From the IMG/VR virus record IMGVR_UViG_3300024239_000013, positions 248,001-312,000 of that record: a stretch of DNA of 64,000 bases, one strand, 5' to 3'. A program made the position numbers and the translations under genes. A model generated the notes under the pieces. The model ran no database searches and was not told the DNA's origin. It saw nothing but the letters and a program-made list of their open reading frames with translations. Below are positions 3,664 to 62,202 of this stretch, one piece after another (position 1 is the first letter of the stretch; each line of letters opens with the position of its first letter).

Positions 3664-3692
3664 ATTATACTATATATCATACATTGAGTTCC
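3664..3692 (-). promoter_or_regulatory. middle-type promoter GGAAC-N18-TATAAT with nested late motif (S1 operon)
   Basis: Exact 18-nt spacer; GATATATA at 3671-3678 lies inside the spacer. Confidence 0.65.
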
Positions 3693-16514: not shown

Positions 16515-16515
16515 A

Positions 16516-17493: not shown

Positions 17494-17546
17494 TTTTGGA
17501 TTTTATTTTAGTGTATATATCCAATAAAAATAAAAATATTCGAAGA

Positions 17547-24438: not shown

Positions 24439-24502
24439 ATATAGACAATTATATTTTTCTATTCTATATATCCAATAAGATTTTTTATATGTTACCTAAA
24501 CT

Positions 24503-30085: not shown

Positions 30086-30093
30086 TATATATC
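30086..30093 (-). promoter_or_regulatory. late promoter of protease-capsid operon
   Basis: GATATATA 25 nt upstream of ATG 30060. Confidence 0.75.
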
Positions 30094-34291: not shown

Positions 34292-34299
34292 CAAATTTA
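34292..34299 (-). promoter_or_regulatory. Bacteroidota-type -7 element TAAATTTG (exonuclease)
   Basis: Matches TAnnTTTG; 17 nt before ATG. Confidence 0.55.
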
Positions 34300-35237: not shown

Positions 35238-35266
35238 ATTGTATCTGAATAACAGTAAATAGTTTC
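35238..35266 (-). promoter_or_regulatory. middle-type promoter GAAAC-N18-TACAAT (uvsE)
   Basis: Read directly. Confidence 0.65.
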
Positions 35267-39356: not shown

Positions 39357-39360
39357 ACTA

Positions 39361-39389
39361 ATTCTAGTGAATAAATTAATTCTTGTTTC
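39361..39389 (-). promoter_or_regulatory. middle-type promoter GAAAC-N18-TAGAAT (clamp loader operon)
   Basis: Fills the 33-nt intergenic gap. Confidence 0.7.
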
Positions 39390-40738: not shown

Positions 40739-40746
40739 CAAATATA
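40739..40746 (-). promoter_or_regulatory. Bacteroidota-type -7 element TATATTTG (ligase)
   Basis: Matches TAnnTTTG; 17 nt before ATG. Confidence 0.55.
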
Positions 40747-43442: not shown

Positions 43443-43446
43443 TTTA

Positions 43447-45036
43447 TTATAATGTTACTTCCGGGGTTTCTTCACCTTCACCCTTATTTTCGGCTTTCTT
43501 TTTTTCCCTTTCCTTTCTTTCTAAAGCTTCTTTATTTGCAACTATATCTTGTTTAGAAATACCTAAGTAGTTTTCTATAAGAAAAGCATTAGAAAAATAC
43601 GGTTCTTCATTATCTCCTAAAATTCCACTCATGGATAGAATTGCTTCTTTCTTCTTTTCTATTGTTGCTATTTCCTGATTTATTTTAAATGGATTATCAG
43701 AGAAATAATCTAAACCTAATTGGCTTTTAAATAAGAAATCATCTTCAAGATTAGGATATTTCTTAACCATTTGTATCCAAAGTGGTTTTATTAGAATCTC
43801 CTGGAAAGTAGATCTTAGTCTAGATATGAATTTTGAAAATCTTATTTCTTCCTTATCCAGTCCCTCTGCACCATTTGAATAAGGAGACGTACTTCCTCCA
43901 TCTGGATTATGAAACCTAGAAGGAGGTACTTTAGATTCTAATATAAACTTATCGAAAAAATAACTCAAAGGTTGAGGATCGTTTAAATTAGGACCCTCCG
44001 TATTTATAGGTTCTATAGTAGGTGTACCATTTACACCAGAAGGCATCAGATAGTTTTTGTAGAATTGTATCTTTGGTCTACCGTCTATTGTCAATTCACC
44101 ACTTTCATCATTAAGTTCTATATCCTCCTTATAAATGCTCATTAGTTCGCCTAGAGTTTGCATTCCTTTTTGCTGGGATTTAGATCCTATCGGAACTGTC
44201 ATTTTCAGCTTAAATGAAGCGTTCATAACGGACCAAATAACTCTAGTATATTCCATGATTCGTAGAATATTATAGGGTCTTATAAGTCTCTCTATATAGC
44301 TTATTCTTGATATAGCATTACCCTTCGCATAAGAAATATAAATTATCTGTGGATCATATAAAACTCTTTTTCTTTTAGGATCTTGTGGATATTGTGTCCA
44401 TGTATTTATAAAAGTCCCATCTATTTGTTTTTCTACACTAGGAACTAGGGTTACCGCATCTAATTCTTTAAATCCTATTATATTTTCTCCTCTATCATCA
44501 TAGATTATCTCAAATGCTAAGAAACCATCTATTATAAATTGTCTGAAATATTGCCAGGCTGTTATATCGTCCGAAAATCCCCAGATGTCATATAATTTTT
44601 TATATGATTCATAAAGTTCATCCTTTAATTTTTCATTTATATCAGTAATATCAATAAAGTCGGGATAAGCAAAGAAATTTGAAGGATCATAGGATATCGA
44701 CTCGTCACATATAGTATCTAGGACCCATTCAATCTCAGGATTAAGTGAGAATTTTCTTAAGAAATCTCTTTTCCCTTTATAGTCCTTATCGAAATATCCG
44801 ATAAACTGTTTAGTAGTTATATCCTGCTTTGCTAAAGTCCATAACATACTTTCGTCCTCCACGTTGGACTTATTCTTGTTTAAGAAGTTTGCTTCGGTTA
44901 CACCTACAGCCTGTGAATTTCTGATGACCATGTCATCATACTTCATACCAAAGGTACTTATCTTCCTAACAGAGTCTCGGATTCTCTGTATAACAGGAGT
45001 CTGTGATGGATTATTATTATCTACAAAGCCAGCCAT
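43447..45036 (-). CDS. gp20: portal protein gp20-like, copy 1
   Basis: FRQFIIDG, SYIERL, KVPPSRF, KEEIRFSKFISRLRSTF. Confidence 0.85.
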   Translation of the reverse strand: MAGFVDNNNPSQTPVIQRIRDSVRKISTFGMKYDDMVIRNSQAVGVTEANFLNKNKSNVEDESMLWTLAKQDITTKQFIGYFDKDYKGKRDFLRKFSLNPEIEWVLDTICDESISYDPSNFFAYPDFIDITDINEKLKDELYESYKKLYDIWGFSDDITAWQYFRQFIIDGFLAFEIIYDDRGENIIGFKELDAVTLVPSVEKQIDGTFINTWTQYPQDPKRKRVLYDPQIIYISYAKGNAISRISYIERLIRPYNILRIMEYTRVIWSVMNASFKLKMTVPIGSKSQQKGMQTLGELMSIYKEDIELNDESGELTIDGRPKIQFYKNYLMPSGVNGTPTIEPINTEGPNLNDPQPLSYFFDKFILESKVPPSRFHNPDGGSTSPYSNGAEGLDKEEIRFSKFISRLRSTFQEILIKPLWIQMVKKYPNLEDDFLFKSQLGLDYFSDNPFKINQEIATIEKKKEAILSMSGILGDNEEPYFSNAFLIENYLGISKQDIVANKEALERKEREKKKAENKGEGEETPEVTL

Positions 45037-45069
45037 TTAAATAATACTTTATTAATTTTATCGAATTTC

Positions 45070-45672
45070 TTAAATTAATTTCGATCTATATTCATTATAT
45101 ATCCCCTGTATGGATAACCCCTCTATCATATTAAAACTAAGATAAGGAATTTTTGGCCAATCCTCCATGGAAATAACCTTAACATTTTTTATGAATTTAT
45201 ATTTAAATCCAAAATAGGAATTTAAATATCCAGTACCTTTAAGAATATTCTTTAGCACAGGGTCCTTTAAATTCACTGGAACTTTGGTCGATCCTCTTTC
45301 GTATGAATTCTTATTAGCTAATAATTGTTCATAGAAATTATCATATATTCTTTCTATTATATCAACTCTTATTATATTCGGTACAGTTATTAAATCTATA
45401 CCTTTTATTACAGTTCCAGATTCTAATGTGTTGAAAACATCGGTACAAATAACAAGAGGCATTCGATCTACGAAAGGCCTTTTTTTGCTAATTTCAGAAT
45501 CCGTTAAATACCTAAAAGAGTAAATCTCTCCTGGGATGAATGGAGGAATGAAAGATATATCTGGTGAATCGTTCTTAAAATATTTACTTAAGAACAGATC
45601 ATTAGTTGAAGTGAATATGTTTCCCGAACTAGTTTCATCTTCTTTGTATTTAAGAACTAAATCTTTATACAT
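45070..45672 (-). CDS. DNA end protector gp2-like (tentative)
   Basis: PGEIYSFRY..DRMPLV pattern; adjacent to gp4. Confidence 0.5.
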   Translation of the reverse strand: MYKDLVLKYKEDETSSGNIFTSTNDLFLSKYFKNDSPDISFIPPFIPGEIYSFRYLTDSEISKKRPFVDRMPLVICTDVFNTLESGTVIKGIDLITVPNIIRVDIIERIYDNFYEQLLANKNSYERGSTKVPVNLKDPVLKNILKGTGYLNSYFGFKYKFIKNVKVISMEDWPKIPYLSFNMIEGLSIQGIYNEYRSKLI

Positions 45673-46157
45673 TATTTACTTTTAAATAGGAAATTTTCAT
45701 CAATAACACCAAATTTATAGCCCCTTTTTTCAGCCCATATTTTTGCAGCTTTGAATTTTGCTTGGTTTGTTATCCAGATCTGCATATTTCTATTATATGA
45801 TTTTAACTTTGCAACCGTCATCTTACCCTCATAAATTGGTTTTTTCGTTTGATTCTCTGGTTTTATTTCAATTATCCATTCTTGAGCATCTCCAGATTCC
45901 TTTACAACCTTGATATAAAAATCTACATTATATTTATGCTCTTTTTTATCTAATGGATTATAATACTCGATAGCAATTGGTTCGGAACTCCACTTTACTA
46001 TAGAATCATTTGTATCACAATACGTACAAAAACGATACTCCCAAGAGGATCTATATATGATGTTATGAATATCTCCTATATACTTTTCAGGATTTCTGGG
46101 TTCGTATTTACCGGATTTATATTCACCGTTTGGTTTTATCTTCTTTATATCAGGCAT
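45672..46157 (-). CDS. gp4: head completion nuclease, gp4-like (TnsA-like)
   Basis: GKYEPRNPEKYIGD, YRSSWE, WSSE, YNVDF, EIKP, NQAKFKAA. Confidence 0.85.
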   Translation of the reverse strand: MPDIKKIKPNGEYKSGKYEPRNPEKYIGDIHNIIYRSSWEYRFCTYCDTNDSIVKWSSEPIAIEYYNPLDKKEHKYNVDFYIKVVKESGDAQEWIIEIKPENQTKKPIYEGKMTVAKLKSYNRNMQIWITNQAKFKAAKIWAEKRGYKFGVIDENFLFKSK

Positions 46158-46163
46158 ATGGTA

Positions 46164-46523
46164 TTAAATATTATATGAATTATCATCACCAGTGATATAG
46201 CTAAATGGTATAGTTTTAGGATTTTTAGGGGGATGTAATTTTTTCCATCCCTTAGCAAATCCATTTTTAGCAATCTGTGTAAAATAAGCAAATGGATTAT
46301 TAGACTTTTCAGGATTGAATCGATTCCAATATTTACAGAGATCTTCCATAGCAAAGGCCATACAATCTTCTTTATCTTCTGGATCTTTATATGACATTTT
46401 CTTAGCTATACCGTTTATCATTAAGGTAAACATTTCTATAGTTTCCGGTGTCAGCTTACCGGCTTTCTTTGATTCTATTACAGCAAGCATAAGCTCACTA
46501 TTTTTAACATATTCTTTTGCCAT
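46164..46523 (-). CDS. gp55: late-transcription sigma factor, T4 gp55-like (short)
   Basis: YVKNSEL, FNPEKSNNPFAYFTQIAKN; start reassigned to ATG 46523 because the longer ORF crosses a terminator and promoter. Confidence 0.8.
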   Translation of the reverse strand: MAKEYVKNSELMLAVIESKKAGKLTPETIEMFTLMINGIAKKMSYKDPEDKEDCMAFAMEDLCKYWNRFNPEKSNNPFAYFTQIAKNGFAKGWKKLHPPKNPKTIPFSYITGDDNSYNI

Positions 46524-46549
46524 TAATTGTTTAATTAGTTTGGATTTAT

Positions 46550-46578
46550 ATTCTAGTATAAAAAATGGTAAATATTTC
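46550..46578 (-). promoter_or_regulatory. middle-type promoter GAAAT-N18-TAGAAT (late sigma gene)
   Basis: Between terminator and ATG 46523. Confidence 0.65.
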
Positions 46579-46580
46579 AT

Positions 46581-46617
46581 AAAAAAAGAATGTAGCTTTT
46601 TGGTTACATTCTTTTTT
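46581..46617 (-). terminator. intrinsic terminator
   Basis: aaaaaagaatgta ... tacattctttttt inverted repeat. Confidence 0.75.
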
Positions 46618-46775
46618 ATTTTTATTCCTTTCTTCTCCGGTTTCGTCTGCATCCGAATCGTCTTTTATTTCTTTTCCATCTGGTGCCTTACTTAATTTTC
46701 CTTCCGAAGATTGAACGAAGGGTTCACCCGGTTTATTTTGATCTTCCGATTTTGGAGCAAAATAAAAGTTACGAC

Positions 46776-49163
46776 TTAGTTTTTTTTTAAAGTTTCAGAT
46801 TCGGTTAAATTCCCATCATTTTCAACTTTACCCTCTCTAAGATTATATCCAATTTCATATTTTTCCCCATCTGCATCTTCTGCATCAAAATTAGTTTTAT
46901 CTTTGGTTTTAGGTGAATCAGCTAAAAGTTTTTCTCCTTCCACTTTACCCTTTTCTTTTTTATTGTTTCCTGGGGCTTTTGCAAGATCGTCATTACCATC
47001 TTTCTTCTTAGCTTCGTTCATAGTAATATTATACCCATGAAGAGAATCTAATTCCATTTCTATGGAATCTTGTTCTCCCTTAGGAGCTTTAGAAAAACTG
47101 TGGCTATCTGCAAAATTCTTTAAAAGAGTTTTTTGCTCTTCTATGCTTAGGTCTGATTTATTAAGATTATTTGACTCTTTAACTTCTTCTGCTTCCTCCT
47201 CCTCTTTAGCATCTTTTTCATTTTTATCTGCAGCTTGACTTAAAGCTTCTTCCAAATCAGAAATTTCATTAACTAGGAAATCTTCGGTTTTTCCGTTGTC
47301 TAAAAGTATAGTATATCTTCCAGATGTCCCATCTACTGAAATTATCTTACCGGTTTCTCCTGATTCTTTAACTTTTATAAAATCTCCAATATTGAATTTT
47401 TCATCTTCTGATATATTAATTTTGTCAGCAAATGAAATTTCTTCTTCTATTTTAGATATTTCAGTGTTTATTTGGTTCCATTTTTCTCTTAGAACATTTA
47501 GTTCGTTTTCTAATGCAGATTTAGCAGTTAGAATTTCATTAGAGCTTTTATATAAAGGTGAAGATTCTAATAAAGAATTTATTTTATTAATCTCATTCTC
47601 AACTTTAGAAATATTTTCTAAAACTTTATTTCTATCATTTACCATGATAGATTTTAGTTTATTTTCGCCTTCCAAGAACTCAGTTAACCCTTCCGAAATA
47701 TCATATTTTAAATAAGACTTAACCATAGAAACTGCTTGAGTTCCACTAACTTTGAAAATTGAATTTTCATTCATAGTTTGGTTAATCTTTTGTAAATAGA
47801 TCTGATTATTCCACTTGAACATATTTACACCAACTCCTTCATAGATATTAGAATTTATACTTTTTGCAAAATCTAACTCAACTATATCTGAATAGTTATT
47901 GTATAAGAACATTGTATCATTAACAACTTCTGATTCATTTACTCCAAAATAAGAGCTAGACTCTAATCCTAATATTTTAGCAAGTCCAATATTATCTGAA
48001 AATCTTAATTTATCTTTTCCTAAATAAACTGCTACATTTTCTCCCTCTTCTACTAGTTTAACTATTTTTTTACCAAATCTAATGGAAATACCATTCTCAT
48101 TAATAGTAACATGTGGTTTTTTAGTAATCTCCACTAATTTAAGATAATCTGAAGGTAATTCAGAAACCTGTTTTTCTGTTAATTTAACTAATTCTTTTTC
48201 TGATGCTTCGAATACAGAATTTCCTATATGGAAGAAAGTTCTTCCATTTTCAAATAAAATAGGCGAGTAAACTCTAGAAACGCTAGATTCACCCTGAGCT
48301 TTTATTGGAATTTCCAAGAATCTATTATCCTCTTTCTCGTTTATATTTAGAAAATTTATTAAATTTCTAACAACTGGATTGAAACTATATTTAGAAATAT
48401 CTCTAACTAATAAACCATTTGACTTTTCTTCTGAAACCAACCAAGAATTTAAAGTTTCAGAAAGTTCAGAATAGAATGCATAGCTTCCACTATTTTTGAT
48501 AGATTCTAAAACTTTAGAAACCTCAATTTCTCTAGAATATTTTTTAGCTTTATTCTTTAACTCTTCTGCTATACCTCTAACTGAATTTTCCCAATTAAAA
48601 GATTCTAATTCAGCAATAAAATTATTCACTACAACAAACTCAGGAAGATTCTTATTTAAAATAAGATTCTGATATTGTTCAAAAAGTACTTTTGCTTTAG
48701 GATACTCACAGATAGAAGATTCTTTCAACTTGGAAATTGCCTCCATAACTCCCAAGTTTTTAATTCCTTGAGATTCAATAAATGAAATAGCAGATCCGTC
48801 TTTATCTTCTAAACTAGATATACTCTCTAATAGTTTTTCAGATTTGGCATCGTCCATTTCATTACCAGGAAGATATGATCCTGAATTTGATGATGTGTTT
48901 TTACCTAATCCTGACCAAGATTCCATAAGTGCTTCTGCTGCTCTTTTAGATACCTCAGCTTCTTCCTTTCTTATTGCTTCAATGTGATTGACAATACTAG
49001 GAGATTCGTTTTGTGTCATTTCTGAATTATTATGTTCGTTGATAGAAGCTATTAATTGATCTTTAGAAACGGATTCGCCTCTAAGAAAACTCTCACATAG
49101 TGATTTTACCTCTGGAGATTTTGTTACCTCTTTTAATTTTTTTACTTGGTTTATAAAGTCCAT
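46776..49163 (-). CDS. large acidic virion/prohead-core-like protein with KOW-like domain; possible -1 frameshift extension
   Basis: 795 aa; many (I/L/M/V)xE sites; FNIGDFIKV..GKIISVD; late motif at 49186. Confidence 0.5.
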   Translation of the reverse strand: MDFINQVKKLKEVTKSPEVKSLCESFLRGESVSKDQLIASINEHNNSEMTQNESPSIVNHIEAIRKEEAEVSKRAAEALMESWSGLGKNTSSNSGSYLPGNEMDDAKSEKLLESISSLEDKDGSAISFIESQGIKNLGVMEAISKLKESSICEYPKAKVLFEQYQNLILNKNLPEFVVVNNFIAELESFNWENSVRGIAEELKNKAKKYSREIEVSKVLESIKNSGSYAFYSELSETLNSWLVSEEKSNGLLVRDISKYSFNPVVRNLINFLNINEKEDNRFLEIPIKAQGESSVSRVYSPILFENGRTFFHIGNSVFEASEKELVKLTEKQVSELPSDYLKLVEITKKPHVTINENGISIRFGKKIVKLVEEGENVAVYLGKDKLRFSDNIGLAKILGLESSSYFGVNESEVVNDTMFLYNNYSDIVELDFAKSINSNIYEGVGVNMFKWNNQIYLQKINQTMNENSIFKVSGTQAVSMVKSYLKYDISEGLTEFLEGENKLKSIMVNDRNKVLENISKVENEINKINSLLESSPLYKSSNEILTAKSALENELNVLREKWNQINTEISKIEEEISFADKINISEDEKFNIGDFIKVKESGETGKIISVDGTSGRYTILLDNGKTEDFLVNEISDLEEALSQAADKNEKDAKEEEEAEEVKESNNLNKSDLSIEEQKTLLKNFADSHSFSKAPKGEQDSIEMELDSLHGYNITMNEAKKKDGNDDLAKAPGNNKKEKGKVEGEKLLADSPKTKDKTNFDAEDADGEKYEIGYNLREGKVENDGNLTESETLKKN

Positions 49164-49247
49164 TTTTTACTTTTTTTTTACTGTTTATATATCCAACTAA
49201 GGACAAGAAACTTTTACTATATATTTTACGATATAATCTTTTTTTTC

Positions 49248-49742
49248 TTAATGACATACTAATATTTCCAATTTAACTGTTATATCAGTACTTGGATTAT
49301 AAAATGATATTCCACCATCACCAATATTACCGGAAACTGTTCCAGGTTTAGATAGATTCCATCCAAGATATTCTGAATTTATAGTAGAAACTTTAGGTCC
49401 GGAAAGCACCATCAATTCACCCATATTATTAATATTTCCCTGATATGTCCAATTTATGTATTTTCTAGATTCTACGACCGTGCTCGGGTATACTGCTTTT
49501 ACTGCTATGAATGAAACATATCCATTTTCATCTGCAATATCACTTTGACTCAATAGAGATCTACTACCAGGTCTTAAAGTTACTCTAGATCTAGAAAATT
49601 TATTCACGGGTATACTCAAATCACTCAAAGAAAGGTATTTTATGGGATTCATAGAATTGCCATCATCTAATACTAAGTCTTCTTTATAAAATCTAAGTCC
49701 TTCTGTTACGTCATAAGGACAATTGATAGGTTGTGTTGCCAT
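49248..49742 (-). CDS. hypothetical virion protein (paralog of 49744-50418)
   Basis: Shared VSxIxxKAxY, MGExMxLSG and F.NP motifs. Confidence 0.55.
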   Translation of the reverse strand: MATQPINCPYDVTEGLRFYKEDLVLDDGNSMNPIKYLSLSDLSIPVNKFSRSRVTLRPGSRSLLSQSDIADENGYVSFIAVKAVYPSTVVESRKYINWTYQGNINNMGELMVLSGPKVSTINSEYLGWNLSKPGTVSGNIGDGGISFYNPSTDITVKLEILVCH

Positions 49743-49743
49743 T

Positions 49744-50418
49744 TTAATTTGCTGTTATTACTATTAATTTTACCTCTGAAGATGTTGGGTTAGTAAAAAT
49801 AAAACCACCCATCGAAGAATCCGAATTTTCGCTGTGGTCATACGTAGAAAATGGATCTACGTCCCATCCCATCCAAGATGAATTATTTTTAATTGCACCA
49901 GAAAGAATCATAATTTCACCCATTACATTTCTCTGATTTGCCTTATAGTCCCAAAATAATATCTTATCCTCTTCGGGGGTTCCTGGTAGATATTCGGCTT
50001 TAGCTATTATAAGGGAAACTTCTCCGTTTGTGCTGGTAAATGAAGAAGGGTCCAAATTAGCTGATGTTTTTGGCGATATAACAAAGGTTTGCTTTTGGTA
50101 ATTAGAAAATTCTTGAAGTGGATGAAAAAAATCAATCACACTAAGCTTATCCAATATTTTATCCTGGAAAACAACATCAAAAGCTCTGTTTATGAACTTT
50201 ATTTGATTAGGATCGTTGAATCTTTTAAATGTAGCTTCTATTACTTCCATCTGTGGTATAGATCTAGCTATATTTTGATATTCTATATCAAAAGAAGCAG
50301 TATCACCAGAAGGTGATATCGAGAACTGTGAATTCCCACCTAATATTGAATTAGAACTACTTTGTATCGAATTCCCTCCATCGAAATTTTCATTGTTTAA
50401 TATTTCTGTATCTGACAC
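49744..50418 (-). CDS. hypothetical virion protein (paralog of 49248-49742)
   Basis: Same shared motifs; GTG start. Confidence 0.55.
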   Translation of the reverse strand: MSDTEILNNENFDGGNSIQSSSNSILGGNSQFSISPSGDTASFDIEYQNIARSIPQMEVIEATFKRFNDPNQIKFINRAFDVVFQDKILDKLSVIDFFHPLQEFSNYQKQTFVISPKTSANLDPSSFTSTNGEVSLIIAKAEYLPGTPEEDKILFWDYKANQRNVMGEIMILSGAIKNNSSWMGWDVDPFSTYDHSENSDSSMGGFIFTNPTSSEVKLIVITAN

Positions 50419-50435
50419 TTTTACTTGTGATATTT

Positions 50436-51140
50436 TTATAGTTTGGTTGGATCTATATCCTGATGTATTCTATTTCTATTTACGTGTTTTAATTTCTCAT
50501 CATATTCTGAATTAGAGTTACTAGAATCTGATAAATCTAATATCTGGATCTCATCAGTATTATTAGTTTCAGATCCCAATCCATCAACAAAAAATTCAGA
50601 TTCTTCCTCTTTTTTTTCAAAATCCATCAATTCCTCATTTATTTTAGAATTAGTATCAGAATCGTTATTATCTGATTGTGTTCTACTATTTCCAATTTCA
50701 ACTTCTTCTTCCGGTTTTATGTAGTCAACTAGGGATTTAATAAAACCCAAAGCAATGACAGGAAGAACTGCTCCACTTATAATAGACAATACTCTTTTCT
50801 GATAGATTTTCTCTTCCTCGTCAAGACCAAATAATTCAGACCAACCCTGAAAATCTTGTAGATGAGTATATGCATAGAAAGTATTACCCATTGCTTGCAT
50901 AAGGGTTAATATAATAAATAAGCTCCAAACCATTCCCTTGTTCATTTTATCTAAGGAAATTAAAGATGCTAATGATGCAGCCGCACCAATCTCAAAGGCA
51001 ATAGCCAAACTAACTGCTAGCCAAGTGGGATTGGAGAGTTTAAAGAAATCTATAACGTGAATGGTCGATATAACCGAAACCATCAGATATAAACTAACAA
51101 ATGTACCTATTATAAAATAACTTACTGTTTTTTTGCTCAT
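50436..51140 (-). CDS. multi-pass membrane protein with acidic tail
   Basis: Four hydrophobic helices in the first ~140 aa. Confidence 0.65.
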   Translation of the reverse strand: MSKKTVSYFIIGTFVSLYLMVSVISTIHVIDFFKLSNPTWLAVSLAIAFEIGAAASLASLISLDKMNKGMVWSLFIILTLMQAMGNTFYAYTHLQDFQGWSELFGLDEEEKIYQKRVLSIISGAVLPVIALGFIKSLVDYIKPEEEVEIGNSRTQSDNNDSDTNSKINEELMDFEKKEEESEFFVDGLGSETNNTDEIQILDLSDSSNSNSEYDEKLKHVNRNRIHQDIDPTKL

Positions 51141-51154
51141 TATTATCGATTCTG

Positions 51155-51457
51155 TTATTTTTTAAGACTTTCAAGTTTTTTTATTTCTAAATCAATTTCA
51201 CTCTGTCTGTTCACGTCTAATATTTTTCTATCCGTAGATTGAATCATTCTTTTTTCAACTTTAAGACCTTCTATTTCGATCATATTTTTTAATTCCTGTT
51301 TATTCGCTACAGAATCAAGAATAGCTGATTGTATTTTAGATTGTTTAGCTAATTTTTCAATATCACTATTAGCTCCACACTGTTTAACGAAAAGAACAGC
51401 TAAAAACACAAGTACAATAACTTCAAAATTAGATTTGATTTTCTCGATTATTTTCAT
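51155..51457 (-). CDS. single-TM coiled-coil protein (spanin/lipoprotein-like)
   Basis: Start reassigned to ATG 51457, downstream of terminator and late motif; VIVLVFLAVLFVKQC then coiled coil. Confidence 0.5.
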   Translation of the reverse strand: MKIIEKIKSNFEVIVLVFLAVLFVKQCGANSDIEKLAKQSKIQSAILDSVANKQELKNMIEIEGLKVEKRMIQSTDRKILDVNRQSEIDLEIKKLESLKK

Positions 51458-51502
51458 AATATTAATTTTTATTTTTTTATATATCCAAAAACAAACTCCA
51501 CA

Positions 51503-51535
51503 AAAAAACCAGTAATAAAAATCACTGGTTTTTTT
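51503..51535 (-). terminator. intrinsic terminator
   Basis: aaaaaaaccagt ... actggttttttt. Confidence 0.75.
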
Positions 51536-51554
51536 CATTTTTTTTATGTTTATA

Positions 51555-52112
51555 TTAACCTAGAGTAACTCCTTGCATAGCTGCAGCTAGTTGTTTTTCT
51601 AAATCTTTTACTAAAGCTGCATCTTCTTTTGCATCGGATAATGCTTGATCGAATGCTTTAAACAGTCTAAGAAAATCTTCAGCGCTCTTTAAACCAACAC
51701 CTTTGGATTTAGAAAGGAAATAGTGACTTGCTTCCAGAGGTAAAGCACTCATATAAATAGTATTGTCTTTAATTCCTTCTTTTCTGATCTTTTTAATCTG
51801 TTTATTAACTTCAACAACACCTAAAGCTTCAGTTGAATTCCATTCAGCCTTTTCCTGCATGAATTTTTCATATTCAGAGAAAAGATCTTGATTACAAGAA
51901 ATAGCATAAAGCTTTGTCTTAATCTCTTCTTTTTTAGCAGAAATTTCTTTATGTAATTGATCCACTTTTTCTTGATCAATTCCTATAGGTGAATCCAAAA
52001 TTGAATCTTGAGGAACAGTTGGACCATTAGTATTAAATTTGATTACATTCGATGCTAGAGGTTCGGTATTTCCAATCTCTATTTTTTGTGAATTCTTCTT
52101 AGTTGATGACAT
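51555..52112 (-). CDS. hypothetical protein
   Basis: 185 aa with own GAAAC-N18-TAGAAC motif and terminator. Confidence 0.6.
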   Translation of the reverse strand: MSSTKKNSQKIEIGNTEPLASNVIKFNTNGPTVPQDSILDSPIGIDQEKVDQLHKEISAKKEEIKTKLYAISCNQDLFSEYEKFMQEKAEWNSTEALGVVEVNKQIKKIRKEGIKDNTIYMSALPLEASHYFLSKSKGVGLKSAEDFLRLFKAFDQALSDAKEDAALVKDLEKQLAAAMQGVTLG

Positions 52113-52129
52113 ATTTTTTTAATTTTATA

Positions 52130-52158
52130 GTTCTAGTTATTTTTATTTGTTTTGTTTC
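52130..52158 (-). promoter_or_regulatory. middle-type promoter GAAAC-N18-TAGAAC
   Basis: Read directly. Confidence 0.65.
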
Positions 52159-52977
52159 TTATCTTATATCAAAAATATCAAAATTAGTTCTATTTTGTTC
52201 GAGATATGCTCTCAGAGGCTCTCTTAGATCTTTTGCCGGATATATTTTGGGATTTGAATTTGGTCCTATGTGACAAAGAAATCCACTTTCGGTTTCTATT
52301 CCAATTTCCTCCTCCAATATTAATCTATATAGACTTATTTGTATAGAATATAAGTTGTGCTCATTCTCCCATAAATGAGTAAAAGGTCTTAATAATCTTT
52401 TATACCTTCCTTCAGGATGATCATCATGCTTAAATACACCATTTGTTTTCCAGTCTCCTATAAGTAGAAATAATTTTTCTCTTTTCTGGTCCCAAAATAA
52501 AAATGGTTGGTCGACAGTTCCAGCAAGTCTCCACCTTCTAGAGAATATTTTGAGCTCAGAAGGAAGTGGTACCAATACATGAAATTTTCTATTGTAGAGT
52601 TCAATAAATTTATTTACTCTCAATGAATATTCATCATCAGGATCTATAGAAGGAATCTCTGGATTTTCACCACTCCAAAAATCCTCTATAAATTTATGAA
52701 CCTTCGTACCAAGTTCATTTGCTACATTTGCTTTATTTTTCCATTCATCTAATATAACCGAAACGTCGACTCCTCTTTCTGCTGCTTTTCTCTTAGACCA
52801 ATATTCTCTATTAAAAGGGGCCTTAAAATTTTTAATGTATGTTGTTACGGAATCGAATAATATACCATCATATCTATATGTATGCGTGGCTTCATCAAAA
52901 ACAAATTTAGGATCCTTCGAAAAAATAGCCAATTTGCTTTCTATATCTTTTTTTGTGCTTTCTATGTATTCCTTCAT
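52159..52977 (-). CDS. PD-(D/E)xK exonuclease
   Basis: SVTT, GTKVH, SE, AGTVD, DWKTN, YSIQISLY. Confidence 0.75.
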   Translation of the reverse strand: MKEYIESTKKDIESKLAIFSKDPKFVFDEATHTYRYDGILFDSVTTYIKNFKAPFNREYWSKRKAAERGVDVSVILDEWKNKANVANELGTKVHKFIEDFWSGENPEIPSIDPDDEYSLRVNKFIELYNRKFHVLVPLPSELKIFSRRWRLAGTVDQPFLFWDQKREKLFLLIGDWKTNGVFKHDDHPEGRYKRLLRPFTHLWENEHNLYSIQISLYRLILEEEIGIETESGFLCHIGPNSNPKIYPAKDLREPLRAYLEQNRTNFDIFDIR

Positions 52978-53420
52978 TAAACTAAATTAATAATTTTTAA
53001 GAGCCATTCCCACTTAATAGCAACAAAAACTATAAGTGAAACCTCAACAATAAATCTAAGAATCCACAATAGACTAATATATCTAAATAAGAATTGATAT
53101 ACTACTAAATATGATTCTTCATCGGTTCCTTTTACTGGCTCTATCCACATCGTAAGTAACTCCTCTAAATTAAGAGATTTGAAATACTCGTTAGTAGGCT
53201 TAATTTCACTTATAACAAAAGAAGGTCTAGCATCTTTAGGAAGATCTACAGAAAGAGTAACCTGTGGGGGAAGATTAACGACAGTGTATATTCTATTTAA
53301 ATAATCTCTTCTTAAATTTCTTCTTGCCCATATAGGAGAATCTGTCTCCTCTTTTTTTATGATTTTCACATATTCAAGATAGAGTAAAAATTCTTTTATA
53401 ACCTTAAAAATTCTAAACAT
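52977..53420 (-). CDS. hypothetical protein with C-terminal TM helix
   Basis: Hydrophobic C-terminus. Confidence 0.55.
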   Translation of the reverse strand: MFRIFKVIKEFLLYLEYVKIIKKEETDSPIWARRNLRRDYLNRIYTVVNLPPQVTLSVDLPKDARPSFVISEIKPTNEYFKSLNLEELLTMWIEPVKGTDEESYLVVYQFLFRYISLLWILRFIVEVSLIVFVAIKWEWLLKIINLV

Positions 53421-53432
53421 GATGGTTTATTT

Positions 53433-53461
53433 TTTATATCATCGTAAATCTTTATTGTTTC
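53433..53461 (-). promoter_or_regulatory. middle-type promoter GAAAC-N18-TATAAA
   Basis: -35 lies in the last codons of the ECF sigma gene. Confidence 0.6.
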
Positions 53462-54060
53462 TCGTCTATTTTTTTTCTGATTTTACTGCGAGCTCTTCTG
53501 ATCCTTGTAGCGATGGATCTTTTCTTTATCCCATATTTTTCTGCAATGTCCTTATATTTCATATTGTTTATCTCTCGGTCGATCATAATGTCTCTGTATA
53601 ACTCTGGGAGATCTCTAATCTCATCCAGAACGGATTCATAAAACTCATCAAAAGTAGATTCCTCCTTATAGAATGCATACAAAGGATCCTCTTCTAAAAC
53701 ATACTGTCCTCCTATCTCATTGGATTCGTTTTTTGAAGAAAGATATTCGAGTTCAGCATCAGTGTGATTGTGATATCTTTTTCTGGACTTCATTAAGAGG
53801 AGAGATTCATTTCTTGCTATATTATAACACCAAGTTGAAAAATTTCCTCTTTCATTGTTATACTGGTCTATTTTTATCCAAATTTTAGACATGGTATTAA
53901 TGAAAGCATCTTCAGCAAGTTCCTGTTCTTTTACAATCAAAAAACAATGGTTTAGTATACCAGGTCGGAGTCTCTCGAATAAAATTTTAAAATTCTTATC
54001 ATTTTTCACAGTTATGAAATCCTCAGCTATCTTTTGGATATTCTTTTCTTTTTGTTGCAT
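53452..54060 (-). CDS. ECF-type (sigma-70 group 4) sigma factor
   Basis: Region 2 AED...FSTWCYNIARN; region 4 LPELYR..MKYKDIAE..SIATRIRRAR. Confidence 0.85.
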   Translation of the reverse strand: MQQKEKNIQKIAEDFITVKNDKNFKILFERLRPGILNHCFLIVKEQELAEDAFINTMSKIWIKIDQYNNERGNFSTWCYNIARNESLLLMKSRKRYHNHTDAELEYLSSKNESNEIGGQYVLEEDPLYAFYKEESTFDEFYESVLDEIRDLPELYRDIMIDREINNMKYKDIAEKYGIKKRSIATRIRRARSKIRKKIDEKQ

Positions 54061-54063
54061 ATA

Positions 54064-54669
54064 TTAAAATTGGTTTTTTATTTTACTGTTTGAAAATTTT
54101 ACTATTTCTATATTGGCTTCTACCAAGAACGATAAAGATTCAGGTTTTCTATAAACCTCTGAAAAAATAACTCTCTTTATACCAGATTGGATTATTAGTT
54201 TAGAACACTCATAACAGGGAGAAAGAGTTACATATAAACTAGAACCCTCAGAACTCTGAGTTCCCTTCGCTAGCTTAGTTATCGCATTAGCTTCTGCGTG
54301 TAATACATAAGGAAGAGTTATATTATCCACATTTTCACAAATGTTCGGGAACCCTGTAGGAGATCCGTTATATCCGTCCGATATTATCGATTTGTCTTTA
54401 ACTATTAAACATCCAACTTTCATTCGATTGCAATGAGAATTTTTAGACCAAACCGAAGCCATTTCCAGGTAAATTGAATCTTTTTTATCCGTTACTTCCG
54501 AAAATTCACGATCGGACAATTCAGATTCAGAATAGAATACTTCTAATTTTTTATCTTCGTTAGTTTTAACCGACCAAAAGGGTAAAGACAGAAAATCATC
54601 CGTCATAAAAGACATGTCATCACAGACTCGTCTATTAACATTTTCTGTAATTTTTATAGATTTTAACAT
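54064..54669 (-). CDS. dCMP deaminase
   Basis: KVGCLIV, GYNG, HAEANAI, SPCYEC. Confidence 0.88.
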   Translation of the reverse strand: MLKSIKITENVNRRVCDDMSFMTDDFLSLPFWSVKTNEDKKLEVFYSESELSDREFSEVTDKKDSIYLEMASVWSKNSHCNRMKVGCLIVKDKSIISDGYNGSPTGFPNICENVDNITLPYVLHAEANAITKLAKGTQSSEGSSLYVTLSPCYECSKLIIQSGIKRVIFSEVYRKPESLSFLVEANIEIVKFSNSKIKNQF

Positions 54670-54689
54670 ACAACTACATTTGATTGGTG

Positions 54690-54697
54690 CAAATGTA
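54690..54697 (-). promoter_or_regulatory. Bacteroidota-type -7 element TACATTTG (dCMP deaminase-ECF sigma operon)
   Basis: Matches TAnnTTTG; 20 nt before ATG. Confidence 0.55.
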
Positions 54698-54737
54698 GAT
54701 CAAAATCTCGCTATAAAAAAATATTTTGTATTATTTT

Positions 54738-56271: not shown

Positions 56272-56508
56272 CTACTTTTTTAGATTAAATACTTGTTTCA
56301 CACCTCCTTCATTCTGTGCTTCTGCATTTTCAGCTTCTATGGTAGCATTTAATTTATTTAGCCATATCTGATATTCGTAGAAAGGTATGGATTCTAACCA
56401 TTCTGGGTCTATTCCATGTTCTCTCCACATTCTAAACTTAATATCAAAGAAGTTCTCTAAAGATATCTGAAATAACGAAAAGAGATCTAATCCCTCTGGG
56501 AAATGCAA
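56272..56508 (-). CDS. gp51-like / tail chaperone second ORF (possibly made by frameshift)
   Basis: SLENFF..LESIPFYE pattern; TTG start only; overlaps upstream gene in +1 frame. Confidence 0.5.
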   Translation of the reverse strand: MHFPEGLDLFSLFQISLENFFDIKFRMWREHGIDPEWLESIPFYEYQIWLNKLNATIEAENAEAQNEGGVKQVFNLKK

Positions 56509-57529
56509 GGTAAGCGGATACCTCTTCTTGTCCGCACAATTCGCACTTTTGTTTAACGGTTAATTCAGTTCCCAATTTTATTCTTTCGGAAAGCTCAAAA
56601 TATAAACTATATTCTTCTTTTGTCCAATAATCAGATTCCCTCATTTTGAACATTATTTTTTCAGTTGTTAAATCTCTCCACTCTTCAAATAGGAAAGGTG
56701 ATATTTTAAGGAATCCCTCATCTATTTCTATTCCTTTTTTAACTGAATCTGCCACAAACTTAGATATTGCTTTAGTAACTCCTATGCTAGGTATAAACAT
56801 TTCTATTTTTTTACCAATTCTCTTAACATCAAAAACAAAAGATCTAGTTTCCGGATTATAATATTCCATTATTTTTTCATCAAGTTCATATGAACTTAAA
56901 ACGCCGGTTCTTAATTCTATTCCATCCTTATATGGACACTGTGGATTATTACCACATTCCTTATTTAAAGGAAGAATTATCGAATTCTCTCCTTTTACAA
57001 AAGTAAGATCCCTGATTGCCATTATAACAAAAAATCTATCCTCCTGCTTAAGATCCATATATGAAACTACTCCTTCCCCTGGAAAATCGATTCTTAGACA
57101 TCTGTCCAAGATATAGCTAAGCTTATCTTCTACGTCAAGTCTATCTTCGTCATCAATAGTCGAGAAATGTCTTATCTCTCTTACCTCAGCAGATCTTATA
57201 GCTAATTTAGATCCATCGGGATAAAAAAGACCCATTGAAGGAAGTATTTCAACTGGAAGATTTTTCCAACCAGTATCAAAAGCTGGAGAAGCTGATTGTG
57301 CCTTACCAAAACTATTAACTAGTGGTTCCTCCGAATTTAAACTAGATTCTAGTTTTATCGGTTCCTTTCTGATTAGATTATCAGGGATGTTAATTTGTTT
57401 TGACTGATCTATTTCTACTCCAACTACTGAACTTTGCATATTTTCGTTAGAAGTTACCGGATCATCATAAACTATTCCTCCTGACAATTCCTTATTCTTT
57501 AGAATTTCTTCTGGTGATATGTTATCCAT
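56444..57529 (-). CDS. gp26-like baseplate hub / tail assembly chaperone
   Basis: LPSMGLFY, EDRFF..IRDLT, CxxC motifs. Confidence 0.6.
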   Translation of the reverse strand: MDNISPEEILKNKELSGGIVYDDPVTSNENMQSSVVGVEIDQSKQINIPDNLIRKEPIKLESSLNSEEPLVNSFGKAQSASPAFDTGWKNLPVEILPSMGLFYPDGSKLAIRSAEVREIRHFSTIDDEDRLDVEDKLSYILDRCLRIDFPGEGVVSYMDLKQEDRFFVIMAIRDLTFVKGENSIILPLNKECGNNPQCPYKDGIELRTGVLSSYELDEKIMEYYNPETRSFVFDVKRIGKKIEMFIPSIGVTKAISKFVADSVKKGIEIDEGFLKISPFLFEEWRDLTTEKIMFKMRESDYWTKEEYSLYFELSERIKLGTELTVKQKCELCGQEEVSAYLAFPRGIRSLFVISDIFRELL

Positions 57530-57562
57530 AATTTTTTATTTATTCATTATATAACCAAAAAC

Positions 57563-57594
57563 AAAAAAAGAGACCAAAATTGATCTCTTTTTTT
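57563..57594 (-). terminator. intrinsic terminator after tube genes
   Basis: aaaaaaagaga ... tctcttttttt. Confidence 0.7.
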
Positions 57595-57619
57595 TATATA
57601 ATTTAAAAAAATTATCAAA

Positions 57620-58195
57620 TTACAAGAAAAGGTCTTCCCAATAATCACAAACCCAACTAGTTGTTATTGTATAGATAGTTGCTTGTTCATAGTCTAGTTC
57701 CATGGGATTTATAGCTTCACTCAAGAAACATGAGGGTATTCTTATTCTCCTAAAAACATCCCCTCTTTTATTAAAGATTGATATTGAGATAGATCCTACA
57801 TAGTCTGCTTTTATCCCCATTGCACCTGTAAGAGGATTATAAATTAAATCTGACCATTGTCTAAGTATTTTATAAACGCTCATCGAATTAGCATCATTTA
57901 AGTTAACCTCAAATTCCATGGTCAATGTCATATCACTTTGAGAAGGTTCTCCCCCTGCATATCTTCTTGTTGCAAACTTATAGTTTTGGTTAATAGTCTG
58001 TGCAGGAGCAATATCAACAGCTAACCCTGTTATAGATTTAACTTGTTGTGCTAATATTCCCTCCCCATTAAATGCCGTTGTTGCATCTAAAATACCAGCA
58101 GGAGGATTTATAATAACTTCAAACTGGTTCAAAAATACCGGTTCATAGTTATTTATTGCTGCTTTAGAATTCGTAAAATGTGGTAATCCTGCCAT
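57620..58195 (-). CDS. gp19: tail tube protein gp19-like, copy 2
   Basis: Directly after sheath and tube 1; LRQWSDLIYNPLTG, DYWEDLFL. Confidence 0.8.
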   Translation of the reverse strand: MAGLPHFTNSKAAINNYEPVFLNQFEVIINPPAGILDATTAFNGEGILAQQVKSITGLAVDIAPAQTINQNYKFATRRYAGGEPSQSDMTLTMEFEVNLNDANSMSVYKILRQWSDLIYNPLTGAMGIKADYVGSISISIFNKRGDVFRRIRIPSCFLSEAINPMELDYEQATIYTITTSWVCDYWEDLFL

Positions 58196-58767: not shown

Positions 58768-58811
58768 AGTTAGTTATATTTATCTTTACTTATGAAAATC
58801 ATCAAATTACA

Positions 58812-62194: not shown

Positions 62195-62202
62195 TATATA
62201 TC
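62195..62202 (-). promoter_or_regulatory. late promoter of sheath gene
   Basis: GATATATA 29 nt upstream of ATG 62165. Confidence 0.75.

What the first reader, a model, noticed from the sequence alone, without database searches (positions are those of the whole stretch)
46164..54697. Three-tier sigma cascade readable from the promoters: host sigma -> phage ECF sigma -> gp55-like late sigma
Seen: three motif classes that sort by gene function. The ECF sigma (53452-54060) is second in an operon behind TACATTTG, the Bacteroidota housekeeping -7 consensus. The gp55-like gene is cut off from upstream transcription by a terminator and preceded by GAAAT-N18-TAGAAT. Structural genes carry GATAWATA. 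Known: ECF sigmas often read GAAC/AAC-type -35 boxes with rigid spacing; T4 uses MotA/AsiA rather than a sigma for middle genes; SPO1 uses a sigma cascade. Inference: a T4-like phage that uses an ECF sigma for middle transcription, and that sigma switches on the late sigma.
Basis: partly seen in the sequence, partly recalled or inferred. Interest (0 to 1): 0.85.

Follow-up and report, generated by a model that had tools for sequence, protein, structure and literature searches.

The report
Sigma-factor cascade in a huge phage
A huge uncultivated phage of Bacteroidota carries three conserved promoter types, wired so that the host sigma factor should turn on a phage ECF-type sigma, which should turn on a T4-like late sigma; the wiring is well supported by comparison with hundreds of relatives, but which sigma reads which promoter is still inferred.

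Summary
The raw motif counts are not above chance. The evidence comes from strand, position and conservation in 278 related loci from IMG/VR. The window is part of a 319-kb viral contig. Its distant kin are Lak-type megaphages.

- **Host-type promoters:** a T-run followed by TAnnTTTG, kept in 44/46 relatives before the dCMP-deaminase/ECF-sigma pair.
- **Bipartite class:** G(G/A)AAC or GAAAT, then N16, then aCTAnAA. It is kept before the gp55-like gene (35/47), the clamp loader, and at least four other genes.
- **Single-block class:** (G/A)ATAWATA, kept before sheath, tube, prohead protease and other virion genes (79-100%).
- **Terminator:** it insulates the gp55-like gene and has compensatory base changes.
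- **Corrected start:** the gp55-like gene starts at 46523, not 46652.

The bipartite class has ECF architecture, like SigW promoters and like phage 7-11 sigma promoters (GTAAtg-N16-aCTA). It is absent from a Chryseobacterium phage that lacks the ECF sigma.

There are no transcript data, because the "RNA" runs are DNA. The sigma assignments and the timing therefore remain inference. Sorting by gene function is imperfect, since some promoters are dual. This is a new variant of a known kind. Confidence in the full cascade is about 0.55.

The parts
54690..54721 (-). Host-type (Bacteroidota sigma-A-like) promoter of the deaminase/ECF-sigma operon. The T-run is at 54715-54721, a conserved CG at 54709-54710, and the -7 box TACATTTG at 54690-54697.
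   Evidence: TA..TTTG is kept in 44/46 distinct relatives. The family consensus is tAtTTTTTttt..CG.a.tttTtt.TTAtaTTTG. The palindrome partner CAAATGTA (54675-54682) is not conserved.
54064..54669 (-). dCMP deaminase gene, first gene of the operon.
   Evidence: phrog_174, 2.7e-52. It lies directly upstream of the ECF sigma gene in 57/57 distinct loci.
53452..54060 (-). ECF-type sigma factor (202 aa; sigma-2 plus sigma-4 only).
   Evidence: Pfam r2 and r4_2; TIGR02937 at 69.6 bits against a cut-off of 42.9; best solved homologue is B. subtilis SigW, 5wuq, 3e-10. It has no conserved promoter of its own.
53434..53461 (-). Bipartite ('middle') promoter GAAAC-N18-TATAA. It overlaps the last codons of the ECF sigma gene and drives 52977-53420.
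   Evidence: Kept in 53/55 relatives.
52977..53420 (-). Conserved 147-aa protein with a C-terminal membrane helix. It always follows the ECF sigma gene. Function unknown.
   Evidence: Synteny in 57/57 loci. AF2 pLDDT 80 with no PDB fold match, and no family hit.
52130..52158 (-). Bipartite promoter GAAAC-N18-TAGAAC before the 185-aa gene 51555-52112.
   Evidence: Kept in 43/45 relatives while the spacer varies.
49186..49193 (-). Late-type promoter GATATATA before the 795-aa gene 46776-49163.
   Evidence: Kept in 46/47 relatives.
46581..46611 (-). Intrinsic terminator (7-10 bp stem, then T7) that closes the late transcription unit upstream of the gp55-like gene.
   Evidence: dG -11 kcal/mol, z -5.97. 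In 24 relatives, 5 of 10 pairs show compensatory changes.
46550..46578 (-). Bipartite promoter GAAAT-N18-TAGAAT of the gp55-like gene.
   Evidence: Kept in 35/47 relatives with a rigid N18 spacing. The -35 is GAAAT rather than GAAAC in nearly all of them.
46164..46523 (-). gp55-like late sigma (119 aa, region 2 only). The in-frame extension up to 46652 is an ORF-calling artefact.
   Evidence: phrog_234 at 2.8e-14; T4 gp55 7d7c_F at 4.9e-4; the start is fixed by relatives.
39361..39389 (-). Bipartite promoter GAAAC-N18-TAGAAT, 4 nt before the clamp-loader gene 38412-39356.
   Evidence: Kept in 31/39 relatives; clamp loader is phrog_168, 1e-61.
40739..40746 (-). Host-type -7 box TATATTTG before the DNA ligase gene 39390-40721.
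   Evidence: Kept in 32/39 relatives.
35238..35266 (-). Bipartite promoter GAAAC-N18-TACAAT before the endonuclease-like gene 34323-35225.
   Evidence: Kept in 35/41 relatives, some with a GGAAC -35.
34292..34299 (-). Host-type -7 box TAAATTTG before the 3'-5' exonuclease gene 33573-34274.
   Evidence: The same extended architecture is seen in relatives. 16/48 match strictly and 23/48 when the last base may be A.
45055..45103 (-). Tandem late (GATATATA, 45096-45103) and bipartite (GAAAT-N17-TAAAAT, 45055-45082) promoters before portal paralog 43447-45036.
   Evidence: Late motif in 42/45 and bipartite motif in 36/45 relatives.
3665..3692 (-). Overlapped dual promoter. GGAAC-N18-TATAA has the late block GATATATA (3671-3678) inside its spacer. 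It lies before gene 2462-3628.
   Evidence: Late motif in 22/22 and bipartite motif in 15/22 relatives.
62195..62202 (-). Late promoter before the tail sheath gene 58812-62165. Other conserved late promoters lie at 58777-58784 (tube), 30086-30093 (prohead protease), 24465-24472, 17514-17521, 15694-15701, 8182-8189 and 32755-32778.
   Evidence: Kept in 79-100% of relatives. Functions are from PHROGs.

Best explanation
The window is part of a huge T4-core phage of Bacteroidota, probably of Saprospiraceae. Its transcription program is a three-tier sigma relay.

- **Tier 1.** Host RNA polymerase with the host primary sigma starts at T-run/TAnnTTTG promoters. These serve early genes, including the dCMP deaminase/ECF-sigma operon.
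- **Tier 2.** The phage ECF sigma has both sigma-2 and sigma-4. It redirects core polymerase to bipartite promoters of the form G(G/A)AAC or GAAAT, then N16, then aCTAnAA. These serve replication genes (clamp loader, nuclease-like genes), several unknown genes and the gp55-like gene. The gp55-like gene is shielded from upstream read-through by an intrinsic terminator.
- **Tier 3.** The gp55-like sigma has region 2 only. It reads the single-block promoter (G/A)ATAWATA before virion genes, as T4 gp55 reads TATAAATA.

Shown here: the three promoter classes, their conservation, the gene order and the terminator.

Inferred: which sigma reads which class, and the order in time.
For: **Classes and wiring**
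- Motifs occur in 74-100% of orthologous upstream regions against 1.4-4.2% of random 80-mers. Spacers and flanks vary freely.
- Position statistics in the window support this, as does unbiased 7-mer enrichment.
- The deaminase, ECF sigma and 147-aa genes keep their order in 57/57 loci. The two sigma genes lie 7.1-8.0 kb apart in 101 loci.
- The terminator shows covariation.

**Host class**
- TAnnTTTG is the published Bacteroidota -7 element (PMC6847099).
- Saprospiraceae genes fetched here carry TATGTTTG before their start codons.
- Close ECF sigma copies sit on contigs binned as Saprospirales.
- E. coli-type TTGACA/TATAAT sites are not enriched (54 found, 69 expected).

**ECF sigma and the bipartite class**
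- A bipartite promoter with rigid spacing needs a sigma with region 4. The ECF sigma is the only such protein found in the window.
- The -35 box (GAAAC 131, GAAAT 56, GGAAC 28) and the -10 box aCTA match ECF architecture.
- The best solved homologue is SigW. Its promoters are tGAAAC/CGTA (PMC5758882).
- The sigma of phage 7-11 was shown in vitro to read GTAAtg-(16)-aCTA (PMC8948821).
- Chryseobacterium phage MA9V-2 has a gp55-like gene but no homologue of this ECF sigma. It has host-type promoters but no bipartite class.

**gp55-like sigma and the late class**
- It is homologous to T4 gp55 and has region 2 only.
- The late motif is a single block without a -35 element.
- GATATATAA also appears in intergenic regions of LR756500, whose gp55-like protein is 47% identical.
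Against: - No transcription start sites or timing data exist. The wastewater "RNA-Seq" runs that hold the phage behave as DNA and are available only as contigs.
- Only 64 kb of at least 319 kb was visible, so other sigma factors or activators may exist.
- 12 of 47 relatives lack the bipartite promoter before the gp55-like gene.
- More distant phages with ECF-like sigmas (LR756500, Lak) show neither the gene order nor that promoter.
- No gp33 or sliding-clamp homologue was detected in the window.
- No anti-sigma partner or autoregulation was found, although both are usual for ECF sigmas.
- Some virion genes carry bipartite promoters as well, so class and function do not map one to one.
Confidence: 0.55

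Rival explanations
1. The three promoter classes are real, but the bipartite class is read by something other than this ECF sigma. Candidates are a second phage sigma encoded outside the window or a host alternative (ECF) sigma. The window's ECF sigma would then serve another purpose, for example a small regulon or host genes.
For: Only a fifth of the contig is visible. Jumbo phages of this group are reported to carry more than one kind of sigma (PMC7824862). The ECF sigma lacks the usual autoregulatory promoter. Distant ECF-like homologues are not linked to this motif.
Against: The ECF sigma gene is universally kept next to a bipartite promoter and 7-8 kb from the gp55-like gene. The motif matches ECF architecture, including the promoters of its best solved homologue. 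Dependence of a lytic program on a stress-induced host sigma would be unusual (inference).
Confidence: 0.2
2. Both phage sigmas act, but not as an ordered relay. The classes would overlap in time, with the ECF sigma and the gp55-like sigma acting concurrently. The terminator-plus-promoter unit would only set the dose of the gp55-like protein.
For: Dual promoters (bipartite plus late) occur before portal paralog 43447-45036 and gene 2462-3628. A quarter of relatives drive the gp55-like gene differently. There are no timing data.
Against: The sigma gene of each tier lies behind a promoter of the previous tier. This wiring enforces order in SPO1 and T4 (established knowledge). Replication genes and virion genes largely separate by class.
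Confidence: 0.12
3. The bipartite class is read by the host primary sigma after remodelling by phage factors (sigma appropriation, as with T4 MotA/AsiA). The GAAAC box would be an activator site rather than a -35 element.
For: T4 uses this solution for middle genes. The -10 part TAnAAT looks like a generic sigma-70-family -10 hexamer.
Against: No MotA or AsiA homologue was found among about 60 window proteins. Bacteroidota primary sigma prefers TAnnTTTG, not TAnAAT (PMC6847099). The rigid N16-18 spacing to a GGAAC/GAAAC box is the ECF pattern.
Confidence: 0.08
4. The conserved blocks are not promoters. They would be RNA processing, translation or packaging signals, or by-products of coding constraint.
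For: Two apparent hits turned out to be coding-sequence conservation: TAnnTTTG before 45070-45672 and the bipartite match before 5152-5853.
Against: The other sites are intergenic, strand-specific and at promoter-like distances from start codons (median 16-23 nt). They often follow terminators and keep bipartite geometry while the spacers vary.
Confidence: 0.03

Closest known systems
T4 late transcription (gp55 with gp33 and the gp45 clamp; promoter TATAAATA)
   Same: A small region-2-only sigma homologous to gp55. A single A/T-rich block without a -35 element lies a short distance before virion genes. The clamp-loader gene is expressed from the preceding class.
   Different: The motif is (G/A)ATAWATA. 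The protein is shorter (119 against 185 aa). No gp33 or clamp was detected in the window. The sigma gene is driven by an ECF-type promoter rather than by MotA/AsiA-dependent middle promoters.
Bacillus phage SPO1 sigma cascade (host sigma-A, then gp28, then gp33/34)
   Same: The logic is the same: each tier's sigma gene sits behind a promoter of the previous tier (PMC13401047 abstract; established knowledge).
   Different: The sigma families differ (ECF-type and gp55-type), as do the host phylum and the virion lineage. This is an analogy in circuit design, not homology.
Sigma factors of Salmonella phage 7-11 (gp47) and coliphage phiEco32 (gp36)
   Same: They are phage-encoded small sigmas that redirect host core polymerase. 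7-11 gp47 has region 4 and reads the bipartite GTAAtg-(16)-aCTA in vitro (PMC8948821). The -10 box is the same as here and the geometry nearly so.
   Different: Those are podoviruses with one phage sigma, used for late (7-11) or middle plus late (phiEco32) genes. There is no second, gp55-type sigma downstream, and the -35 sequence differs.
Cellular ECF sigma promoters (B. subtilis SigW, SigM, SigX, SigV; E. coli sigma-E)
   Same: The -35 element has an AAC core (tGAAAC), the spacing is rigid, and the -10 element is short (CGTA or CGTC) (PMC5758882). SigW is the best solved homologue of the phage protein.
   Different: The -10 box is aCTA(n)AA rather than CGTx. There is no adjacent anti-sigma, no autoregulation, and the gene is under a housekeeping-type promoter in a virus.
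Group 2.2 jumbo phages as surveyed by Iyer et al. 2021 (includes Lak megaphages)
   Same: That survey notes a minimal sigma, a fuller sigma and gp33 in these phages, and it infers use of host core polymerase (PMC7824862).
   Different: No promoter classes or regulatory wiring were described there, nor in the 2026 jumbo-phage review. The fuller sigma here is ECF-type, not RpoD-like.

Membership tests
ECF (group 4) sigma-70 family | Only sigma-2 and sigma-4 domains, about 200 aa, no region 1.1 or region 3. | tested here: met
   202 aa with Pfam Sigma70_r2 at 27-95 and Sigma70_r4_2 at 142-194, and no other domain.
ECF (group 4) sigma-70 family | Scores above the curated cut-off of the ECF superfamily model. 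| tested here: met
   TIGR02937 at 69.6 bits against a cut-off of 42.9. The nearest subfamilies (Sig70_bacteroi1 at 80 bits, sigma_PG0214 at 71.5 bits) are below their own cut-offs, so no known subfamily is assigned.
ECF (group 4) sigma-70 family | Reads promoters with an AAC-core -35 element and a short -10 element at rigid spacing. | tested here: inconclusive
   Such a conserved promoter class exists in the genome. That this protein reads it was not testable.
ECF (group 4) sigma-70 family | Adjacent cognate anti-sigma and positive autoregulation (usual, but not obligatory). | tested here: not met
   There is no conserved ECF-type promoter upstream. The invariably adjacent 147-aa membrane protein matches no anti-sigma family or fold.
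T4 gp55 late sigma family | Sequence homology to gp55. | tested here: met
   phrog_234 'late sigma transcription factor' at 2.8e-14. phmmer to T4 gp55 (7d7c_F) gives 4.9e-4 over residues 4-97. tblastn hits cyanomyovirus genes annotated as late sigma.
T4 gp55 late sigma family | Region-2-like domain only, with no -35 recognition domain. | tested here: met
   119 aa with Pfam Sigma70_r2 only.
T4 gp55 late sigma family | Single-element TATAAATA-like promoters before late (virion) genes. | tested here: met
   (G/A)ATAWATA is kept in 79-100% of relatives before sheath, tube, protease and other genes, with no conserved upstream element. Recognition by the protein was not tested.
T4 gp55 late sigma family | Works with the gp33 co-activator and the DNA-loaded sliding clamp. 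| not testable with these tools
   No gp33 or gp45 homologue is seen in the 64-kb window. The rest of the genome was not available.
Phage sigma cascade (SPO1 type) | Each sigma gene is transcribed from a promoter of the preceding class. | tested here: met
   At sequence level, the ECF sigma gene lies behind TAnnTTTG (44/46). The gp55-like gene lies behind a terminator plus a bipartite promoter (35/47).
Phage sigma cascade (SPO1 type) | Temporal succession of the classes during infection. | not testable with these tools
   The only runs that hold the phage are effectively DNA and are stored as contigs.
T4 middle mode (MotA/AsiA sigma appropriation) | A MotA box at -30 with a sigma-70 -10 element, and MotA and AsiA genes. 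| tested here: not met
   The upstream element is G(G/A)AAC or GAAAT at ECF spacing. No MotA or AsiA hit was found among the window proteins. The rest of the genome was not seen.
Bacteroidota primary-sigma promoters | A -7 element TAnnTTTG, with a weaker -33 TTTG. | tested here: met
   The -7 box is conserved before three genes. At about -33 the family has a T-run rather than TTTG, which fits the weak -33 reported for F. johnsoniae (PMC6847099).
Intrinsic (Rho-independent) terminator | A stable stem-loop followed by a U-run, with the stem kept by compensatory changes. | tested here: met
   z -5.97. 5 of 10 pairs show double changes across 24 relatives, and the T-run is invariant.

The most novel reading that the evidence does not exclude
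The ECF tier is itself a timer. The gp55-like gene and a portal gene keep a weaker GAAAT -35 box, while replication genes keep GAAAC or GGAAC. The late sigma would therefore come on only once the ECF sigma has accumulated. The ECF-dependent 147-aa membrane protein always lies next to the sigma gene. It would feed back on the sigma as a new kind of anti-sigma and close the middle phase.
Probability: 0.1. Interest if true: 0.75.

Novelty: new variant of a known kind. Interest (0 to 1): 0.6.

Why it matters
T4-type phages are the textbook case of stepwise takeover of host RNA polymerase. Their middle step (MotA/AsiA) is confined to enterobacterial relatives. How the many other T4-core phages bridge early and late transcription is largely unknown.

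This finding proposes a concrete bridge for a very widespread family. About 270 contigs in IMG/VR, from environmental samples, belong to it, and some exceed 430 kb. An ECF-type sigma under a host-type promoter would switch on replication genes and the gp55-type late sigma.

It yields promoter consensus sequences for three classes and exact templates for in vitro tests. It also gives a way to predict expression timing of hundreds of unknown genes in uncultivated huge phages of Bacteroidota. This matters because Bacteroidota promoters differ from the E. coli paradigm.

Tried and rejected
1. **Transcript evidence.** Of the 19 runs listed, four wastewater "RNA-Seq" runs were laid on 43400-49399. 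They are flagged as probably DNA and are contigs only, with flat depth and no start or end pile-ups. This was a dead end.
2. **TACATTTG-N7-CAAATGTA palindrome as an operator or terminator.** The second arm is not conserved, so it is incidental.
3. **An autoregulatory promoter (GAAAT-N18-TAAAAT, 54080-54108) before the ECF sigma gene.** It is not conserved. The GAAAT is part of a conserved codon run of the deaminase.
4. **TAnnTTTG before 45070-45672 and the bipartite match before 5152-5853.** Both lie in conserved coding sequence and were discounted.
5. **The 147-aa neighbour as an anti-sigma.** It has no family, no Atlas lead and no PDB fold match. The AF2 model is alpha/beta with one membrane helix.
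6. **The same wiring in distant phages.** LR756500, Lak-B5 and MA9V-2 lack the bipartite promoter before their gp55-like genes. The ECF-like gene of LR756500 has different neighbours.
7. **E. coli-type sigma-70 promoters.** They are not enriched.
8. **Stop-codon recoding or read-through joining deaminase and sigma.** The two genes share a frame in the window. However, TAA is the main stop (51/59), and relatives have varied gaps with several stops.
9. **The long ORF 46164-46652.** It was rejected in favour of 46164-46523.
10. **Autoregulatory ECF promoters before cellular Saprospiraceae homologues.** Only housekeeping-type boxes were found.
11. **tRNA and Rfam scans.** Both were empty.

Full report
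**What the window is.** About 60 genes lie almost all on the minus strand. GC is about 31%, and TAA is the stop in 51 of 59 genes, so the standard code fits. PHROG, Pfam and NCBIfam scans find a T4-type core:
- virion genes: terminase, sheath, two tube paralogs, two portal paralogs (48% identical), prohead protease, a gp23-like capsid protein and a gp5-like hub;
- replication and nucleotide genes: clamp loader, ligase, nucleases and nucleotide kinases.

The window is identical to part of IMGVR_UViG_3300024239_000013, a 319-kb contig. About 270 IMG/VR contigs of up to 434 kb encode close relatives. In GenBank phages, the nearest kin of both sigma genes are uncultured huge phages (LR7565xx) and Prevotella Lak megaphages, at low identity. 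Copies of the ECF sigma at 66-71% identity sit on contigs binned as Saprospirales. All distant cellular homologues found are from Bacteroidota.

**Checking the observation.**
- The ECF-type sigma (53452-54060) and the gp55-like sigma are real.
- TACATTTG lies at 54690-54697, the hairpin plus T7 at about 46581-46611, GAAAT-N18-TAGAAT at 46550-46578, and GATATATA at 49186-49193.
- One correction is needed. The ORF that the finder extends to 46652 contains the terminator and the promoter. Relatives show that the gene starts at ATG 46523, and their upstream gene ends before the hairpin.
- Simple counts do not exceed chance. Strand and position do. The late block is 23 sense and 1 antisense, with 16 within 80 nt upstream of a start codon (p = 1e-13). 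The bipartite motif is 19 sense and 6 antisense, with 10 in that zone (p = 2e-7). TAnnTTTG is not distinguishable by count (45 against 44, p = 0.045).
- An unbiased 7-mer screen of the 37 intergenic pieces puts terminator T-runs, GGATATA/GATATAT and GAAACAA at the top.

**Phylogenetic footprinting.** For every window gene I located the ortholog in 278 related loci. I then took the 80 nt upstream of each, keeping distinct sequences only.

*Host-type class*
- dCMP deaminase 44/46, DNA ligase 32/39, and exonuclease 33573-34274 at 16/48 strict (23/48 if the last base may be A).
- The shared extended consensus is a T-run, a CG dinucleotide, then TTAtaTTTG. The box ends a median of 16 nt before the ATG.

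*Bipartite class*
- 147-aa gene 53/55, 185-aa gene 43/45, gene 13448-14122 16/18, endonuclease-like gene 35/41, clamp loader 31/39, portal paralog 36/45, gp55-like gene 35/47, and gene 2462-3628 15/22.
- The -35 box is GAAAC (131), GAAAT (56) or GGAAC (28).
- The spacing to TAnAA is 18 nt in 215 cases and 17 nt in 50. This is equivalent to N16 before aCTA. The spacers are otherwise unconserved.

*Late class*
- 79-100% before sheath, tube, prohead protease, the 795-aa gene and seven further genes.
- It is a single block, (g)GATATATA, with variants AATATATA and GATAAATA. It lies a median of 23 nt before the ATG.

*Controls*
- Random 80-mers from the same loci carry the motifs in 2.1%, 1.4% and 4.2% of cases.
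- Two apparent hits were rejected as coding-sequence conservation.

**The wiring.**
- The ECF sigma gene never has its own conserved promoter. In 57 of 57 distinct loci it directly follows the deaminase gene, so it is transcribed from the host-type promoter.
- The palindrome around TACATTTG is peculiar to this genome.
- Upstream of the gp55-like gene, the stem of the hairpin changes by compensatory substitutions in 5 of 10 pairs across 24 relatives, and the T-run is invariant. It is therefore a working terminator that ends the late unit of the 795-aa gene.
- Immediately after the T-run comes GAAAT-N18-TAnAAT.
- The two sigma genes stay 7.1-8.0 kb apart in 101 loci.

**Which sigma reads what (inference).**
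- The late block has no -35 partner, and the gp55-like protein has region 2 only. This is exactly the T4 gp55/TATAAATA relation.
- The block recurs in LR756500, whose gp55-like protein is 47% identical. It is absent from Chryseobacterium phage MA9V-2 (34% identical), which seems to use ACATAAAT instead.
- The bipartite class needs a sigma with region 4.
- Bacteroidota primary sigma reads TTTG/TAnnTTTG (PMC6847099). E. coli-type promoters are not enriched here.
- The ECF sigma is the only region-4-bearing protein found in the window. Its best solved homologue is SigW, whose promoters are tGAAAC with CGTA (PMC5758882). That the SigW spacer is 16 nt is from my own knowledge.
- The closest experimental precedent is phage 7-11. 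Its sigma, which has region 4, was shown in vitro to read GTAAtg-(16)-aCTA (PMC8948821).
- MA9V-2 lacks a homologue of this ECF sigma. It has strong host-type promoters but no bipartite class: 3 sense and 3 antisense matches, and 1 of 29 intergenic regions. That is a natural experiment with N = 1.

**Limits.**
- No transcript data could be had.
- Four fifths of the genome is unseen.
- gp33 and the sliding clamp were not found in the window.
- A quarter of relatives, and the distant huge phages, wire the gp55-like gene differently.
- Class and function do not map cleanly, because one portal paralog and gene 2462-3628 carry dual promoters.
- The 147-aa neighbour of the ECF sigma is itself under a bipartite promoter. 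It tempts an anti-sigma reading, but it has no supporting fold or family match.

**Comparison and novelty.** Sigma relays (SPO1), gp55-type late transcription (T4) and ECF-like phage sigmas (phiEco32, 7-11) are each known. Surveys note that jumbo phages of this group carry a minimal and a fuller sigma (PMC7824862; PMC13282480). In the library I searched, I did not find the combination seen here: a T4-core phage whose middle tier is an ECF-type sigma that drives the gp55-type sigma, with the promoter consensus for all three tiers. I rate it a new variant of a known kind. Confidence is about 0.95 that the three classes and the wiring are real, and about 0.55 that the full relay works as proposed.

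Noticed in passing
window 41775-43442 and 43447-45036: There are two tandem portal-protein paralogs (48% identical, both phrog_213). Only the upstream copy (43447-45036) has its own tandem late plus bipartite promoters.
   Followed up: partly
window 57620-58195 and 58213-58767: There are two adjacent tail-tube paralogs (both phrog_32623/phrog_45). The upstream copy (58213-58767) carries the late promoter.
   Followed up: no
window 40771-41742: This gene is very similar to the kinase domain of RfaE/HldE (D-glycero-beta-D-manno-heptose-7-phosphate kinase). It scores 315.6 bits on TIGR02198, just under the cut-off of 345. It is an auxiliary sugar-nucleotide gene sitting between the portal and ligase genes. 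Orthologs were found in only 6 related loci.
   Followed up: no
window 39357-39389: The bipartite promoter of the clamp loader ends only 4 nt before the ATG, here and in relatives. The mRNA would be leaderless or nearly so.
   Followed up: partly
window 46550-46578 and 45055-45082: The gp55-like gene and the portal paralog keep GAAAT at -35 in nearly all relatives. The other bipartite promoters keep GAAAC or GGAAC. This may be a deliberately weaker or later subclass.
   Followed up: partly
window 24503-26239: A 578-aa HNH/homing-endonuclease gene (phrog_3339, 6e-103) lies just downstream of the capsid gene. Orthologs were found in only 4 related loci, so it looks like a mobile insertion.
   Followed up: no
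window 15678-16515: This region holds the only plus-strand ORF of the window (15760-16482, 240 aa, no family hit). It lies in an 838-nt gap between minus-strand genes, bounded by a terminator-like hairpin.
   Followed up: no
window 57530-57619: A conserved terminator is followed by GTTATATAAT before gene 56444-57529. The sequence is invariant in relatives but fits neither GATAWATA nor the bipartite class exactly. It may be a variant late promoter.
   Followed up: partly
window 43400-49399 in runs X1-X4: Wastewater libraries from 2025 hold strains 95-99% identical to this phage at high depth. The phage is therefore common in sewage or activated sludge, which fits a Saprospiraceae host.
   Followed up: partly
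L294 (Chryseobacterium phage MA9V-2, 1-50000): Very uniform early promoters (TTTTCAyATGTCgaAAAtT...TTATATTTG/A) recur before many genes. A putative late block ACATAAAT is also present. The phage has no GATAWATA at all.
   Followed up: partly
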